Source: Zygnema circumcarinatum SAG 698-1b
Lineage: Eukaryota > Plantae > Zygnematophyceae
DNA length: 7,228 bases
Assembly (NCBI GenBank): GCA_037447605.1
Contig: JBBHKD010000071.1
Location: 1-7,228, forward strand
Direction of reading: 5' to 3'
Under the pieces are notes generated by a model, which worked only from the letters and a program-made list of their open reading frames with translations, made no database searches and was not told the DNA's origin. The stretch's first letter is position 1, and each line of letters opens with the position of its first letter. Below, piece after piece: positions 1 through 7,102 of the stretch. The translations under genes and the position numbers were made by a program.

Positions 1-341
1 ATGCTGCGTGCCCGTATCCCACGCCAAAGTCTCAAAAATTGGTTCGGTACAAATTTAGATACTGATGCGCCCAGCTTCGAAGAAAGCAATATTTTGTACA
101 GTGAGAGATTGGACCAATCAAAATTTGCTAAGTCAAAATATAACACGTGGCAGATGTTGATTGGCTGGCAGCTGACAATGTCGAGATCTCGGGCCGAGGG
201 ACGCGCGCACTCGCACGAGCGAGAGCCGGCTTTGGCCAAAGTCGTGGGCGCTTGCCATTCGCTGGGAACAAGTGCGGCTGCAGATCGAACGGTGATCTGC
301 CGTGGTGCGATCTTCGAAGGAATCGACAGCTGCAATTGATA
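1..341 (+). repeat. Partial extra copy of the long-TIR element interior; probable assembly duplication
   Basis: 72-341 is identical to 710-979 (270 bp, offset 638). 1-71 matches ~643-709 with several small indels. The copy ends exactly at the N gap. Confidence 0.9.
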
Positions 342-351: not shown

Positions 352-1059
352 TGGTCATACCGGCAAATGCGGAGTGGTGATAAAGTCACGTCGCGTCACG
401 ATCACGGTTACGTTCGGGGGGCGCGAGACTGGTGAAGTTGACTCGAAAACTTGGTAATCGTACAGCTTGGTAATTGGTAATCGTTTTTTAAGTCTGAGAC
501 CCCCTATTAAGAAGCGGAAGCTCCGTCCGCCACGAGATCGTTCGAAGGTACACGTGTAGTCAATCGCAGCCGTCGATTCCCTCGCAGATCGGAACACAGC
601 AAATCACCATTGAAATCTGAAGGCCGGGCTAGGTCCCAGCGAATGCACGTGCCCACGTATCCCGCCAAAGTCGTCTCAAAAGTGGTTCCGTACAAATTTC
701 GTACGGTCGCAGCTTCGAAGAAAGCAATATTTTGTACAGTGAGAGATTGGACCAATCAAAATTTGCTAAGTCAAAATATAACACGTGGCAGATGTTGATT
801 GGCTGGCAGCTGACAATGTCGAGATCTCGGGCCGAGGGACGCGCGCACTCGCACGAGCGAGAGCCGGCTTTGGCCAAAGTCGTGGGCGCTTGCCATTCGC
901 TGGGAACAAGTGCGGCTGCAGATCGAACGGTGATCTGCCGTGGTGCGATCTTCGAAGGAATCGACAGCTGCAATTGATACGCACGTGTGAAGGACGGACA
1001 CCTGCGAACGATCTCGTGGAGGACGGATCTTCCGCTCCGAGCGGATTCTGGCAGGCCGA

Positions 1060-1067
1060 TATTTCTT
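1060..1067 (+). repeat. Left target-site duplication TATTTCTT
   Basis: Identical to 2013-2020 and immediately abuts the TIR. Confidence 0.92.
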
Positions 1068-2012
1068 GGGTAGTGATATTTCCACCCCTTTTTTGGATCC
1101 AAACACCCCTTCCCGGCCGGGCAGATTTCAGAAGGGATTAAAAACAGAAAATGCTTTTTTCACACCTTTTTGGAATCGATACCTACCTTCTTCCGTCGGC
1201 TGATTTTATTTTTGCTAACCAAGGAAAATGATACCCCGTCACCGCATTTTGAATACTGTATCCCGCCTCCCTGAATTTTTTTTTTGAGGGAAAGAATTAT
1301 CTGCCTGCCCGAATCCGCTCGGAGCGGAAGATCCGTCCGCCACAAGATCGTTCGCGGGTGTCCGTCCTTCACACGTGTGTGTCAATCGCAGCTGTCGATT
1401 CCCTCGCAGATCGCACCACTGCAAATCACCGTTCGATCTGCAGCCGGGCTCGATCTTAGCGAATGGAAAGCGCCCACGAGTCCCGTCAAAGCCAAATCGC
1501 AAGAGCGAGTGCGCGCGTCCCTCGGCCCGAGATCTCGTCAATTTTAGCTCGCAGCCAATCAACATCTGCCACGTGTTTCATTTTTGACGTGGAAAATTAT
1601 GATTGGTTCAAGATCTCAATGTACAAAATTTTGGGTTCCTCACATTGCGATCGTACGCCATTTGTACGGACAAACTTTTGAGACGACTTTGGCGGGATAC
1701 GTGGGCAGGTGCCCCGCGCTGTGACCGAGCCCGGCTGCCGATCAAATAGTAATCTGCCGTGTTGCGATCTGCGAGGGAATCGACGGCTGCGATTGACCGC
1801 ACGTGTGAAAAAAAAATCAGGTAAGCGGGATATTCAAATGGGGTGATGGGTTATCATTTTCCTTGTTTCGCAGCAATAAATCTGCCGATGGAGGGTGGTA
1901 TCGATTCCAAAAAGGTGTGAAAAAGCCATTTTCCGCTTTTAATCCTTTTTGACATCTGCCCGGCCGGGAAGGGGTGTTTGGATCCAAAAAAGGGGTGGAA
2001 ATATCACTACCC
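1068..2012 (-). mobile_element. Non-autonomous long-TIR DNA transposon with both ends intact (945 bp; MULE/foldback-like MITE), inverted relative to the host copy
   Basis: 1068-1126 (GGGTAGTGATATTTCCACCCC...GGGCAGAT) is the exact reverse complement of 1954-2012 (59 bp). Imperfect inverted homology continues as ~1068-1490 versus ~1685-2012, with a deletion near 1808 in the right arm. Flanked by the direct repeat TATTTCTT. No transposase ORF. Confidence 0.92.
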
Positions 2013-2020
2013 TATTTCTT
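2013..2020 (+). repeat. Right target-site duplication TATTTCTT
   Basis: Identical to 1060-1067 and immediately abuts the TIR. Confidence 0.92.
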
Positions 2021-2444
2021 TCCCTCAAAAAAATAATTCAGGGAGGCGGGATATTCAAAATGGGGTGACGGGGTGTCATTTTCCTTGGTTAGCAAAAATA
2101 AAATCTGCCGACGGAAGAAGGTGGGTATCGATTCCAGAAAGGTGTGAAAAAAGCACTTTCCGTTTTTAATCCTTTTTGAAATCTGCCCGGCCGGGAAGGG
2201 GTGTTTTGATCCAAAAAAGGGATGGAAATAACACTACCCGTTTAATTTGTCGAAGGCGATGTTTGTACAGTTATCATAACCCCGCATTTCCATCATTTGT
2301 CGTTTTCGGTAAGCTACCTCGAAGCTGCAGCCGCGGTTGCCGACCTTTTCCCCGCGTCGGTCCAAACGATTTCCGTGTCCAACGCGTCGAGCCGCGTCGC
2401 CGTCGAGCCGCCTCCCGGGGGCTGAGGGCATAAAGGCTGGCGGC

Positions 2445-2705
2445 GGGGGAGGGAGGGAGGGAGAGAGCGAGAGAAAGAGAGAGAGAGAGAGAGTGAGAGA
2501 GAGAGAGGCGAGCGGAGAGAGAAAGAGAGAGGCGATCGGAGGGGAGAGTCGAAGTGAGGAGTGACAGGGGAGCAGCTTGGAGGGCGACGCACTCGGTAAG
2601 GAGGGGAGGGAGGGAGGGGGAGGGAGGGAGGGAGGGAGGGGGAGGGGGAGGAGGGGGAGGAGGGGGAGGGGAGGGAGGGGAGGGAGGGGGAGGGGAGGGA
2701 GGGGG
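2445..2705 (+). repeat. Purine-rich low-complexity tract: (GA)n-like block, then a pure-purine (GGGA/GGGGGA)n block
   Basis: GA dinucleotide runs at ~2461-2530. 2598-2705 contains only G and A, with many runs of three or more G. Confidence 0.95.
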
Positions 2706-2820
2706 CCCTTGTCTGCCACTATTTGCTTTACATACGCGCATGTTGCGAACGGTTTGACTTTGCTCAGTCTTTAAAATTGTTTTATCTCTTTTTTTTCTTA
2801 TGCAATTTGAATGGAAGGAG

Positions 2821-2923
2821 GTAAGGGACGAGGGCATTTTCCTAAGCTATGCGCGACTGATGATTTGAAGACTCGCCGCATTCATACTGACCACTCTCCT
2901 CTACTCTGTTCATGCTTGTGCAG
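2821..2923 (+). other. Putative spliceosomal intron in the 5' leader of the LRR-lipase gene (103 bp)
   Basis: Donor GAG|GTAAGG at 2821, branch-like ACTGAC at 2886-2891, pyrimidine-rich tract, then acceptor TGTGCAG| ending at 2923. Confidence 0.55.
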
Positions 2924-3076
2924 ATCATCATAGCCCATTAAGCAAAGGAAGGCCTTCTATTCTTCACATTTATCGAGCTTCATCCAACTTCGTTCGTCCT
3001 TCTGAAAGAAATTTTCTGAGTTTTAGCCCCTTCAAATTTGACATTCAGCTCAACGAATTTTAGGCATTTTCTCAAA

Positions 3077-5002
3077 ATGCCGAGCAACGAGCAGGCGGTT
3101 GCAGAGAGCAGCTTGCAGTCCCTTCCAGTGGCATTCTTGACTTTACCGAAGGACTCTCCGAAGGACGAGAAATCAAAGCTGCTCTTTGACGGGCTGAAGG
3201 AGTGGTTGCAGAAAGAGCTGCCGCTGCACGAGATGGAGGAGGAAAGGGAGAGAGTGAAAAAGGGGGCGCAGAGGCTTACAGATTTGCTGCCAAGGTTGCA
3301 GGCCAAGCAGAACATTCAGTCTGCTGAGTCCTTTGCTGATTTTTTTGCTCTCCTTGACCTGCATCGGAATTCCCTGCCACCAGGCATTGGCCTGCTGATG
3401 AAACTCGCCGACGAAACCACTTTTAAGGCGAACGGCAAGCAGCTTTCGAAGTTTCCCGTTCCTATCATTGAGTGGAATATTTTGATATCATTGGATCTTG
3501 GAAACAACCGCTTGAGCTCTCTGCCGGTAGAAATTAGTCAACTTCGTCGACTCAAAGAACTGCGCCTCGACCACAATGAGCTGACCTCGATCCCGGCCGA
3601 ACTTTCATCTCTGAAGGACCTGAAACTGCTCGATGTGTATGACAACCGCCTGCTTACTATACCGAGCATGCCAAAGCTCCAACTTGTTCAAGGCCAGCTT
3701 CAAGGGCAAGGAGAATGCGTTAAGGAGGGGTTTATTGTTGGTAAAAACCCGCTGCTCTATCGTCTGGATGACGTTTCATTTCAAGGAGCAGGTGAAGAAC
3801 TTATTAAGGAGATAACCTCAGAATTACATCGTGGATTCGAAGAACACTTTGCAAACGCGGAAACCTCTCGTGCGAGTTGCTCAGCCAGCGAAGTCATCAA
3901 GTATTACAACGAGAAGATTTCAGAGAATTTGACGATCGAAGAAGCTGCGCTGCAGATGCTGACGTGCTCCCTGGTTTATCTGGATGATAAATTCAGCGAC
4001 TTCAAGGACCACCTTGAGTTCAACATAACAACAAACCTGTTGACCATGTACCCTGTGGATAACATAGTGGCACCGCCGGTAGATTACTATGCTAGAAGGT
4101 ACAGAATAAAGGATTCACTTCGAAACCCAGAAGGGTGTATTGGCTTCTACTTGGTTCCAGAAAGCGATGAGGAGAGTCAGAAAGCCAAAATCATTTTGTT
4201 TCGTGGCACAAAACCCAATGCGAAATATTTTCCCACGGGCATCATGGCGGACTTGAATCGTAATTCTGTGGGGTTGTGGGCTTTCACTGATGCAAAGGAG
4301 TACATAAAAAAGTGGGCTGAGGACGCGTTAGGAATGGTCGGTGGTGACGGCATCAAGCTGGTGATAACGGGCCATAGCCTCGGGGGAGCTTTGGCAATGC
4401 ACACCTTTGCCAGCATTGAGGAGCCGCTCCTTCGGCAAAAAAATGTCAGAGTGGTCACCTTCAACGCTCCTGGCGTGGATGAAGACACCATTCGAAACAA
4501 AATGTGTGGTGGTGGAGTAGATGTAACTTTGATGTCGAGGAACATTTGTATGGTTTGCCACGACTGGGATGTTGTGCAGTACGGAGGATTTTTGCAGCCG
4601 CCAGGGATTGTGGTCTACACTGGAGACCTTGTGGACAATCCGTCAAGCTCCTTAACAATACTTCGAAGGTCAAGTGTCTCATTGCCAGACTTGGCCATGT
4701 CTGGATTTTGGGGGCTTGTACGACGGCTCGCTGGTGACAGGGCCATCCCGTCAAAGGCCAGAGCCATTCAAAACCTCCTGAACTCGTTCGTTTATGCGCA
4801 CACGGCTCCGACCTTGGCGCTGCGCCAAATGCATGGGCATGCTCCTGTGGATGTCGAGCTGGAGAGGCATGATGGGGGGCATGTGGCCAATGGCCTCGGA
4901 CCTACTTCCAGAAAGATAGCCTTATATCGCGATATCCTCTCTGCTACGATGGCCGCATGTGGCGGGTTTGGCTCGGCTGTGGGTGGCCTGTTCAAGCGTT
5001 AG
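3077..5002 (+). CDS. Leucine-rich repeat / class-3 lipase-like (alpha/beta hydrolase) fusion protein, 641 aa
   Basis: 1.9-kb uninterrupted ORF. First ATG at 3077 in AAAATGC context, with an in-frame TGA upstream at 3017-3019. Contains LxxLxLxxNxLxxLP repeats and lipase motifs ILFRGT, VITGHSLGGALA, VVTFNAPG, HDWDVV and AH. Stop TAG at 5000-5002. Confidence 0.93.
   Translation: MPSNEQAVAESSLQSLPVAFLTLPKDSPKDEKSKLLFDGLKEWLQKELPLHEMEEERERVKKGAQRLTDLLPRLQAKQNIQSAESFADFFALLDLHRNSLPPGIGLLMKLADETTFKANGKQLSKFPVPIIEWNILISLDLGNNRLSSLPVEISQLRRLKELRLDHNELTSIPAELSSLKDLKLLDVYDNRLLTIPSMPKLQLVQGQLQGQGECVKEGFIVGKNPLLYRLDDVSFQGAGEELIKEITSELHRGFEEHFANAETSRASCSASEVIKYYNEKISENLTIEEAALQMLTCSLVYLDDKFSDFKDHLEFNITTNLLTMYPVDNIVAPPVDYYARRYRIKDSLRNPEGCIGFYLVPESDEESQKAKIILFRGTKPNAKYFPTGIMADLNRNSVGLWAFTDAKEYIKKWAEDALGMVGGDGIKLVITGHSLGGALAMHTFASIEEPLLRQKNVRVVTFNAPGVDEDTIRNKMCGGGVDVTLMSRNICMVCHDWDVVQYGGFLQPPGIVVYTGDLVDNPSSSLTILRRSSVSLPDLAMSGFWGLVRRLAGDRAIPSKARAIQNLLNSFVYAHTAPTLALRQMHGHAPVDVELERHDGGHVANGLGPTSRKIALYRDILSATMAACGGFGSAVGGLFKR
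3413..3676 (+). other. LRR region: one degenerate plus three recognisable repeats with 23-aa spacing
   Basis: ETTFKANGKQLSKFPVPIIEWNI / LISLDLGNNRLSSLPVEISQLRR / LKELRLDHNELTSIPAELSSLKD / LKLLDVYDNRLLTIPSMPK, starting at 3413, 3482, 3551 and 3620. Confidence 0.9.
4130..4810 (+). other. Class-3 lipase-like domain (approximate limits)
   Basis: FRGT at 4199-4210 and nucleophile elbow GHSLGG at 4370-4387 (Ser codon 4376). Candidate Asp codon 4568 and His codon 4799 are assigned by motif position only. Confidence 0.85.
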
Positions 5003-5502
5003 CCATCTTCCAACTCCTGAAGGAAAAATAGCCTTCCAGAAAGAGGAACCTTTGATGGGACAGATTCAGGTGGCAGCTTTGATTATTGGAAGGAGCAGTT
5101 TTACTGGTTATCAATTATTATCTGTTCAATCGTTGTTAATATTAGTCTTATTTTTTATGCTAGGTCCAGTTGCTGGCACATTTGCTAAGCGAACGCTTGC
5201 AGGCATCTTGCATGTCTGTGTCGATGCCAACTAAAGTCCAGCTGAAAATTATTTAATTTATAGAAAATTATTCCATCTGTGGACTCATTTTGTATTCATA
5301 CATGGATCCATCATCAGTGACTCGAAAATCTGTTTCAGATGCATCCGTGGCTGCCTTCTCTCCAGGCCATGGAACCAACTGTTTACAAACTGAAGCGTGT
5401 CCGTTGGCCCTAATTGCAACTTGATCTCAAGGGCTGCTCGATACACGGACTCAGAACGATGGCCGGTTCGCCTTCGCAGCTGCTTTCATAAGCACTGTTA
5501 AA

Positions 5503-5953
5503 CCTCTCCCTCCTCCTCTCTCCTCCTCTCCTCTCCCTCCTCCTCTCTCCTCCTCTCCTCTCCCTCCTCCTCTCTCCTCTCCTCTCCCTCCTCTCCTCTC
5601 CTCTCCCTCTCCTCTCCCGCCCTCCTTTCCTCTCCCTTCCTCCTCTCCTCTCCTCCTCTCCTCTCCCTCCTCTCCTCTCCTCCTCTCCTCTCCCGCCTCT
5701 CCTCTCCTCCTCTCCGCTCCCTCCTCTCCTCTCTCGCCCTCCTCTCCTCTCCCTCTTCTCCCTCCCTCCCTCTCCTCTCCTCTCCTCCTCTCCTCTCCTT
5801 TCCTCAACTCCTCTCCCTCCTCCTCTCCTCTCCCTCCTCTCCTCTCCCTCCTCTCCTCGCCCTCCCTCCCTCCTCTCCTCCTCTCCTCTGCTCTCCCTCC
5901 TCTCCTCTCCCTCCTCTCCTTTTCCTCCCTCCCCTTCTCTCCCTCCCTCCCTC
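5503..5953 (+). repeat. Pyrimidine low-complexity tract, (CCTCT)n-like, about 450 bp
   Basis: Almost exclusively C/T, built from CTCCT/CTCC/CCT units, with only a few G or A interruptions. Confidence 0.97.
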
Positions 5954-6078
5954 AGCACCCCCTGGCCTTATAGAACCTCTGCAGCTCCATTTTCTCTACT
6001 CACATTTCCTTCCTCCTTTCCAACCTCTCTCCAAACATCCTAAATATCACCCTTAACATCTCAGACCCTCAGATCCTT

Positions 6079-6342: not shown

Positions 6343-6646
6343 CATGTGACCGTTTCGTGTCGTTGGCGGTTTTACGGTTTGTTACGGCCTACGCTCCACG
6401 GAGGCGAAGCCGGATTGGCCGCAGGACCACGGAGGTTGGACTTTTGTCTTTTTGTGGATCTCTGCAATCATTGCTATTATGATTGGATCTTCGTACGCTT
6501 TTCGTACTGTGTAAAATGCTGCTGGAATGTACGAATATGTACGGCAGGTACCGAATCAAGTTGTACGGCACAGAAACGGTTACAGTACGCCCCCCTAATA
6601 TTTTCATTCAAAGCATTTCCGCTAGCCAAGAAATTCGCCCAGATTT

Positions 6647-6827
6647 GGGGGAGTCAGACCTTGACCATCGCCAAATCAATTTTGTAGCATTGGCTAGGTA
6701 CGCATTTCGGTACGGCTGGGTACGGCGGAGGCACGGATCCCGATCCGGAATTCGTACACGAAAGATCTGACTTTTAGTGTAAGGAATTTGGGAATTTCGT
6801 AAGCGATGGTCAAGGTCTGACTCCCCC
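6647..6827. mobile_element. Small MITE-like element (181 bp) with perfect 25-bp inverted repeats
   Basis: GGGGGAGTCAGACCTTGACCATCGC (6647-6671) is the exact reverse complement of 6803-6827. A third copy with three mismatches lies at 6999-7023. Flanks are TTT and TAA, so there is no perfect TSD. Confidence 0.6.
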
Positions 6828-7023
6828 TAATACACTATAACGTTCGACAGGCTCGGGCGCCGAGCCTGTATCTCATTTTTGTAACCTATTTCGAAGTACG
6901 GATGGGACAGACAGGTTCGGGGGGAGCCGCGGTTTCCGACCCGAATTCTGCAATCGAAATCAATACCTTTTCGATGGCGAAATCTTTCAATTCCGCCGGC
7001 GATGATCGTGGTCTGACTCCCCC

Positions 7024-7102
7024 TAATACTAAAAATTCGATATTCGTAACATTAGGGCTTAAAAAATTCTCGTAATACTAAAAACTCGATATTCGTAACA
7101 TT
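7024..7102 (+). repeat. 30-bp direct repeat, two copies, period 49 bp
   Basis: TAATACTAAAAA(T/C)TCGATATTCGTAACATT at 7024-7053 and 7073-7102 (one mismatch). Degenerate partial third copy at ~7118-7135. Confidence 0.9.

What the first reader, a model, noticed from the sequence alone, without database searches (positions are those of the whole stretch)
3077..5002. LRR plus class-3 lipase fusion: candidate single-chain sensor-effector
Seen: a charged, probably helical N-terminus, 3-4 LRRs, a ~150-aa linker, then a lipase fold with GHSLGG (Ser434) and candidate Asp498/His575. There is no hydrophobic signal peptide, no Walker A/NB-ARC motif and no kinase. Established: 23-aa LxxLxLxxNxLxxLP repeats lacking the LxGxIP signature are intracellular-type (PIRL/SHOC2-like). 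Lipase folds occur in plant immunity in EDS1/PAD4/SAG101 (lipase plus EP domain) and in hydrolase-NB-ARC-LRR proteins of bryophytes. Neither has this LRR-first, NB-less layout, and I do not recognise it as a characterised family. Inference: a cytosolic ligand-gated or LRR-targeted (phospho)lipase, possibly a minimal immune or cell-death module.
Basis: partly seen in the sequence, partly recalled or inferred. Interest (0 to 1): 0.8.

Follow-up and report, generated by a model that had tools for sequence, protein, structure and literature searches.

The report
Algal LRR-lipase with bacterial enzyme core
This alga transcribes an intact gene that joins a short protein-binding leucine-rich-repeat arc to a lipid-cutting enzyme whose only clear relatives are rare bacterial proteins, some with injected-toxin tags; it is one more copy of a family this scan already reported, and its job is untested.

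Summary
3077-5002 is an intact 641-aa ORF with three canonical and two degenerate 23-aa LRRs and a class-3 lipase. S434, D498 and H575 match the conserved columns of its relatives.

The gene belongs to the host: public contigs show a spliced GT-AG intron in the 5' leader (2596-2923) and no intron in the coding sequence.

One correction: most of the '150-aa linker' (about residues 245-370) is the N-terminal part of the lipase domain. It is shared with an unnamed bacterial lipase subfamily (best 33% identity). Several of those bacterial relatives carry eCIS_core (injection-cargo) or TPR domains; none carries an LRR. It is not an EDS1 or NLR relative.

Paralogous contigs keep the GHSLGG motif through silent changes. 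One LRR-matching contig changes the exposed positions.

Best reading: a bacterial effector-type acyl hydrolase domesticated by the alga, with the LRR aiming or gating it. Horizontal origin is likely, but the tree does not prove it. The immune role is untested.

The scan found this family before on other DNA of this genome (s1-339065, s1-343940, s1-341347).

The parts
2429..2435 (+). TATA-like box about 45 nt upstream of the mapped part of exon 1 (inferred promoter)
   Evidence: read from sequence; not tested
2479..2595 (+). non-coding exon 1; the 5' limit is estimated from contig length
   Evidence: loose ends at 2923 in runs X1 and X12 equal window 2565-2594; 98-116 letters lie before 2923 in X1, X12, X15
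2596..2923 (+). 328-nt GT-AG intron in the 5' UTR
2924..5466 (+). exon 2: rest of the 5' UTR, whole CDS and 3' UTR (3' limit is where the laid stretch ended)
   Evidence: X15 contigs cover 2923-4526 and 4497-5466 with 0 and 2 differences and no gaps
3077..5002 (+). intronless CDS, 641 aa, LRR + class-3 lipase
3161..3409 (+). charged helical N-terminal region (res 29-111), low-confidence model, possibly an LRR cap; includes a degenerate LRR near res 90
3413..3688 (+). LRR arc (res 113-204), canonical repeats at res 136, 159, 182
3689..3796 (+). true linker (res 205-240), low confidence in the model
3809..4846 (+). class-3 lipase domain (res ~245-590), including the subfamily's N-terminal helical segment
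4376..4378 (+). Ser434, nucleophile of GHSLGG
   Evidence: invariant in alignment A1
4568..4570 (+). Asp498, candidate catalytic acid
   Evidence: at least 90% conserved in A1
4646..4786 (+). about 45-aa helical insertion between Asp and His, absent from the bacterial relatives
4799..4801 (+). His575, candidate catalytic base
   Evidence: at least 90% conserved in A1

Best explanation
A host nuclear gene for a cytosolic serine acyl hydrolase (lipase or phospholipase A type; substrate unknown) with an N-terminal LRR arc. Shown: intact ORF, spliced transcript, class-3 lipase fold, conserved Ser/Asp/His, and a family of paralogues. Inferred: (1) the catalytic domain came from a bacterial lipase subfamily that bacteria often use as secreted or injected cargo (about 0.7); (2) it was domesticated under an algal promoter with a 5'-UTR intron, and the bacterial loading segment was replaced by an LRR arc; (3) it is still catalytically active (about 0.8); (4) the LRR concave face binds a protein partner that differs between paralogues, and this binding brings the enzyme to a membrane or releases it from restraint (about 0.5). 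The enzyme would then release fatty acids or lysolipids locally. Whether the trigger is a microbial protein or the alga's own is open.
For: Splicing and continuous CDS in public contigs. Best hits among 1.84 billion proteins reach E 3e-18 at 28-37% identity; every one whose context I read sits on a gene-dense prokaryote-type contig, or is labelled bacterial. A profile of the bacterial rows alone scores the query at 200 bits, against under 100 for other class-3 lipases. Triad columns conserved, with pLDDT 90-98 around them. Fold Z 16.2 to FaeA and 15.4 to Rhizomucor lipase. Twelve hits carry eCIS_core and one carries TPRs; DUF4157/eCIS_core marks eCIS toxins (PMC11297309). The only PDB sequence hits with E below 0.01 are a T6SS lipase effector (E 0.007) and a fungal lipase. 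A paralogue contig keeps H433 and G437 by silent changes; an LRR-matching contig changes residues 160, 161, 163 and 165 while keeping L159 and L162.
Against: The trees do not place the query with support, and the AU test does not reject grouping it with three eukaryotic lipases (p 0.64). The bacterial rows were chosen by similarity to the query, which inflates the profile score. Algal proteomes may be poorly covered: the query itself is not in the collection. Only one eCIS_core protein (P0052) lies inside the closest subfamily; the others are wider neighbours, and no eCIS operon was seen beside any hit. The variable LRR contig is not shown to be joined to a lipase, and the list of differences is partial. 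No LRR-lipase contact is predicted with confidence. Triad geometry could not be measured. No activity data exist.
Confidence: 0.5

Rival explanations
1. Single-chain immune sensor-executor: the LRR holds the lipase off until a microbial protein binds, then the enzyme damages membranes or makes a lipid defence signal.
For: Effector-type relatives, a multi-copy family, and variation at exposed LRR positions in one contig.
Against: No predicted LRR-lipase interface. Only three canonical repeats. Transcript-type contigs occur in many runs from 8 studies, which fits constitutive expression. No infection data.
Confidence: 0.2
2. Constitutive adaptor: the LRR docks the enzyme on one fixed host partner (as the CCR4 LRR binds CAF1), and the protein does routine lipid turnover or signalling.
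For: A short LRR arc with fold matches to SHOC2, RSU1 and the Ccr4 module; present in runs of many studies.
Against: A fixed partner predicts a conserved concave face, but the LRR-matching contig differs exactly there. A multi-copy family with a broken member (s1-341347, not tested here) is unusual for housekeeping genes.
Confidence: 0.2
3. Non-catalytic scaffold of the EDS1 type: the lipase fold is kept for binding, not hydrolysis.
For: EDS1-family chains match the fold at Z 10-11.6.
Against: Triad intact here and GHSLGG kept in paralogues; no EP domain; the EDS1 family is placed in seed plants (10.1101/572826).
Confidence: 0.07
4. Bacterial contaminant or assembly chimera.
For: Intronless CDS; bacterial best hits.
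Against: Spliced GT-AG leader in three runs; contigs run through LRR and lipase in one piece (X15, 2923-4526); flanks are eukaryotic repeats; held by one organism label in 8 studies.
Confidence: 0.02

Closest known systems
Class-3 lipases (Pfam PF01764; Rhizomucor miehei lipase, Aspergillus FaeA, plant PLA1)
   Same: Fold (Z 14-16), GHSLGG elbow, Ser-Asp-His order.
   Different: No signal peptide; N-terminal LRR arc; subfamily-specific helical segment; 45-aa insertion before the His.
Bacterial Tle-like / Mbeg1-like and eCIS_core-fused lipase effectors (PF26363, PF11187, PF13699)
   Same: Nearest sequence relatives; same catalytic core; variable N-terminal modules (eCIS_core, TPR, disordered tails).
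   Different: Eukaryotic nuclear gene with a spliced leader; LRR in place of a loading segment; no immunity gene beside it. The close bacterial subfamily is itself unnamed and untested.
EDS1/PAD4/SAG101
   Same: Class-3 lipase-like fold.
   Different: No EP domain, no sequence hit, LRR-first layout; EDS1 family placed in seed plants.
LRR-enzyme fusions: IpaH/SspH2/SlrP (LRR-NEL), XopAC (LRR-Fic), CCR4 (LRR-nuclease)
   Same: N-terminal 20-24-aa LRRs before a catalytic domain; NCBIfam hits to XopAC, XopL, SlrP cover the LRR only, far below cut-off.
   Different: Different enzyme. Gating by the LRR is known for the NEL ligases (my own knowledge) and untested here.
Arabidopsis pPLA-I (AtPLAI)
   Same: From memory, a plant acyl hydrolase with N-terminal LRRs; linked to basal jasmonate and defence (PMC4371839). 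I could not confirm its LRRs in a held paper.
   Different: Patatin fold (Ser-Asp dyad) rather than a class-3 lipase; no pPLA-I appeared among the sequence hits.

Membership tests
Class-3 lipase (PF01764) | Pfam score above the gathering cut-off | tested here: met
   35.1 bits against cut-off 22
Class-3 lipase (PF01764) | Rhizomucor-type alpha/beta hydrolase fold | tested here: met
   VIA Z 16.2 to 1uwc, 15.4 to 6qpr
Class-3 lipase (PF01764) | Ser-Asp-His residues present and conserved | tested here: met
   S434 invariant; D498 and H575 at least 90% conserved
Class-3 lipase (PF01764) | triad assembled in space | tested here: inconclusive
   high pLDDT and right topology, but no coordinates available to measure distances
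Class-3 lipase (PF01764) | hydrolysis of acyl esters | not testable with these tools
   needs an assay
EDS1/PAD4/SAG101 | C-terminal EP domain | tested here: not met
   only about 50 residues follow the lipase core; no such Pfam or sequence hit
NLR, including hydrolase-NB-ARC-LRR | NB-ARC/NACHT domain with Walker A | tested here: not met
PIRL / SHOC2-type intracellular LRR proteins | 23-aa LxxLxLxxNxLxxLP repeats | tested here: met
   the match is generic and the best hit is a metagenomic LRR protein
PIRL / SHOC2-type intracellular LRR proteins | long LRR array without an enzyme domain | tested here: not met
   three canonical repeats plus a lipase
eCIS/T6SS lipase effectors | loading domain (eCIS_core, VgrG/PAAR) or adjacent secretion locus or immunity gene | tested here: not met
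   absent from the query and the window; eCIS_core present in relatives only
pPLA-I (patatin) | patatin catalytic domain | tested here: not met
   no patatin hit
Horizontally acquired gene | nested in a bacterial clade with support | tested here: inconclusive
   nearest rows are bacterial, no strongly supported clade; AU tests reject neither placement

The most novel reading that the evidence does not exclude
A bacterial injected-toxin lipase was captured by an algal lineage and rebuilt as a family of NB-less, single-chain immune receptors in which a variable LRR arc switches on a membrane-attacking phospholipase.
Probability: 0.2. Interest if true: 0.85.

Novelty: new variant of a known kind. 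Interest (0 to 1): 0.52.

Why it matters
Both domains are common, but I found the combination in no database protein and no paper I could search. If the LRR gates the enzyme, this is a sensor-effector design without a nucleotide-binding switch, in a green alga that earlier scan notes place close to land plants, where little is known about defence. It would also be a case of a bacterial effector-type enzyme reused by a eukaryote. The gene is small, intronless in its coding part and has natural paralogues, so the idea is directly testable. If the LRR is only an adaptor, it is a lineage-specific lipase family of modest interest.

Tried and rejected
The word search with the lipase region gave only 4 distant hits. 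I used the large search because the claim rests on absence of relatives.

Searches that found no LRR-lipase or nothing useful:
- LRR-region search: 146 generic LRR proteins, none of the 120 listed with PF01764.
- Pattern scan of the lipase hits for LRR arrays: none.
- Metagenome scan with the full protein: nothing.
- PADLOC: no hits. Plasmids: four weak hits.
- Viral fold library: separate LRR and lipase matches only.
- Papers: 'LRR-lipase' 0 hits; the combination searches gave papers that do not describe it. The pPLA-I primary paper was not held.

Rejected: contamination, hidden introns in the CDS, EDS1 membership, NLR membership, and a 150-aa linker.

Limits: paralogue contigs seen have no reference, so they were not searched, aligned or joined; only the listed single-letter differences were read for codon effect. 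The species was not identified here.

Full report
Observation. The window holds one long ORF, 3077-5002 on the + strand, 641 aa from an ATG with no upstream ATG in the spliced leader. Pfam finds Lipase_3 at 425-500 (E 1.4e-8, above cut-off), LRR_4 and LRR_8 at 138-195, and a weak Mbeg1-like match. Canonical 23-aa repeats start at 136, 159 and 182; a repeat near 90 is three residues short. There is no Walker A motif and no hydrophobic stretch strong enough for a signal peptide or membrane anchor. NCBIfam hits to XopAC, XopL and SlrP cover only the LRR and are far below cut-off.

It is a real host gene. Twenty public runs of one organism label, from 8 studies, hold the stretch almost completely. 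None is on record as RNA, but their contigs are spliced. In runs X1 and X12 the contigs leave the window at 2923 and continue with letters that equal window 2565-2594; X15 also has 116 further letters there. This defines a 328-nt intron, 2596-2923, with GT and AG ends, in the 5' UTR. In X15 two overlapping contigs cover 2923-4526 and 4497-5466 without gaps, so the CDS has no intron and LRR and lipase lie on one molecule. The flanks are nested inverted-repeat elements and GA/CT tracts. Contamination is rejected. I did not identify the species; earlier scan notes call it a conjugating green alga, which I did not test.

It has paralogues. Contigs of 85-95% identity pile up over the LRR, the GHSLGG region and the His region, up to five at one site. 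A closer copy (34 differences in 379 letters) has a net 6-nt deletion near codon 27. In the listed differences of one lipase contig, H433 and G437 change silently, while changes further on are mostly replacements (6 silent, 11 replacement codons; partial list). In one LRR-matching contig, residues 160, 161, 163 and 165, the exposed positions of the repeat, are all replaced and L159 and L162 are kept. That contig is not shown to belong to a lipase fusion, so this is a hint only. The scan has already reported this family on other pieces of the genome.

What the lipase is. Among 1.84 billion representatives, the lipase region has 94 hits, the best at E 3e-18 and 33% identity, none close. None has an LRR array, and none of the 120 listed LRR hits of similar length has a lipase domain. 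The top hits align over query residues about 255-590. S434 is invariant, and D498 and H575 are at least 90% conserved. The alga has about 45 extra residues between Asp and His. A profile built from the bacterial rows alone scores the query at 200 bits, within the group, while other class-3 lipases score under 100; the rows were chosen by similarity to the query, so this is partly circular.

Where I could read the context, the relatives are on prokaryote-type contigs with genes such as recG, sucC, grpE and epmA, or are labelled Margulisiibacteriota or 'bacterium'. They are rare, mostly single-member clusters. Their N-termini vary: TPRs in P0014, eCIS_core in P0052 and eleven wider neighbours, and a shared LQRxxGN segment in seven members, which I recall from eCIS cargo but did not test. 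eCIS_core (DUF4157) is a marker of eCIS-associated toxins (PMC11297309). The best PDB sequence match is a T6SS lipase effector, weakly. So the catalytic core looks like a modular bacterial cargo lipase, though no member has a tested function and no eCIS operon lay beside the hits I read.

Origin. Trees put bacterial subfamily members nearest to the query, but with no strongly supported clade. AU tests reject neither a grouping with the subfamily (p 0.55) nor one with three eukaryotic lipases (p 0.64). Horizontal origin rests on similarity, the shared N-terminal segment, the lack of closer eukaryotic hits and the intronless CDS; I put it at about 0.7. The LRR is generic and its source cannot be told.

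Structure. The lipase-only model has pTM 0.82 and matches Aspergillus FaeA (Z 16.2), Rhizomucor and Rhizopus lipases (Z 15), pepper PLA1 (Z 14.0) and, further off, EDS1-family chains (Z 10-11.6). In the Atlas the best TM-score by query (0.55) is a bacterial Tle-like phospholipase cluster, commonest phylum Myxococcota. In the full-length model the LRR (res 113-200) and the lipase core are confident and the blocks around the three catalytic residues have pLDDT 90-98. Residues 205-266 and much of the insertion are not confident, and pTM is 0.57, so LRR packing over the active site is neither shown nor excluded. Triad distances could not be measured.

Mechanism. Most likely (0.5 for the whole chain): an active cytosolic acyl hydrolase of bacterial effector ancestry, in which the alga has put an LRR arc where bacteria put a loading or TPR module; partner binding by the LRR aims or releases the enzyme at a membrane. 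The strict immune-switch version gets 0.2, a fixed housekeeping adaptor 0.2, a non-catalytic scaffold 0.07 and contamination 0.02. Shown steps: ORF, splicing, fold, conserved triad residues, paralogues, bacterial nearest relatives. Inferred steps: transfer, activity, LRR function, biological role.

Comparison and novelty. It is a class-3 lipase by profile, fold and motif. It is not an EDS1 protein (no EP domain; family placed in seed plants, 10.1101/572826), not an NLR and not a PIRL. In layout it resembles LRR-enzyme fusions such as IpaH/SspH2 and CCR4 and, from memory, plant pPLA-I, all with other enzymes. No paper I could search describes an LRR plus class-3 lipase; subscription journals are largely missing from that library. 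Verdict: a new variant of a known kind, one more intact, transcribed member of a family already noted by this scan; interest 0.52.

Noticed in passing
window 72-341 and 710-979: A 270-nt stretch is repeated at 100% identity, the first copy ending at the N run at about 342-350; probably an assembly overlap at a scaffold gap.
   Followed up: no
window 511-2239: Nested non-coding elements with long inverted arms (866-1067 / 1292-1493; 1068-1255 / 2052-2239), like MITEs inserted into one another (also noted as s1-546199).
   Followed up: no
window 6643-7027: Short inverted ends (6643-6671 / 6803-6831 and 6998-7027) that begin with a G run next to TAA, as in PIF/Harbinger-type MITEs.
   Followed up: no
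window 5480-5973, - strand: A TATA-like box at 5973-5966 followed by a long GA-rich tract mirrors the gene's own TATA-like box and GA-rich leader (arms 2433-2473 / 5929-5969, 76%). It may be a convergent promoter or chance similarity of simple repeats.
   Followed up: no
L012:282-1886 (P0014): A bacterial member of the same lipase subfamily has N-terminal TPRs: an independent solenoid-repeat plus lipase layout.
   Followed up: partly
L011:315-2213 (P0052); L009:10001-11449 (P0109): The unnamed bacterial lipase subfamily includes an eCIS_core fusion and a group with a shared LQRxxGN N-terminal segment: candidate undescribed eCIS lipase cargo.
   Followed up: partly
L002:13855-16939: A DotU/TssL and IcmF/TssM gene pair lies about 3 kb from the lipase relative P0007, without other secretion genes called in the stretch shown.
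   Followed up: no
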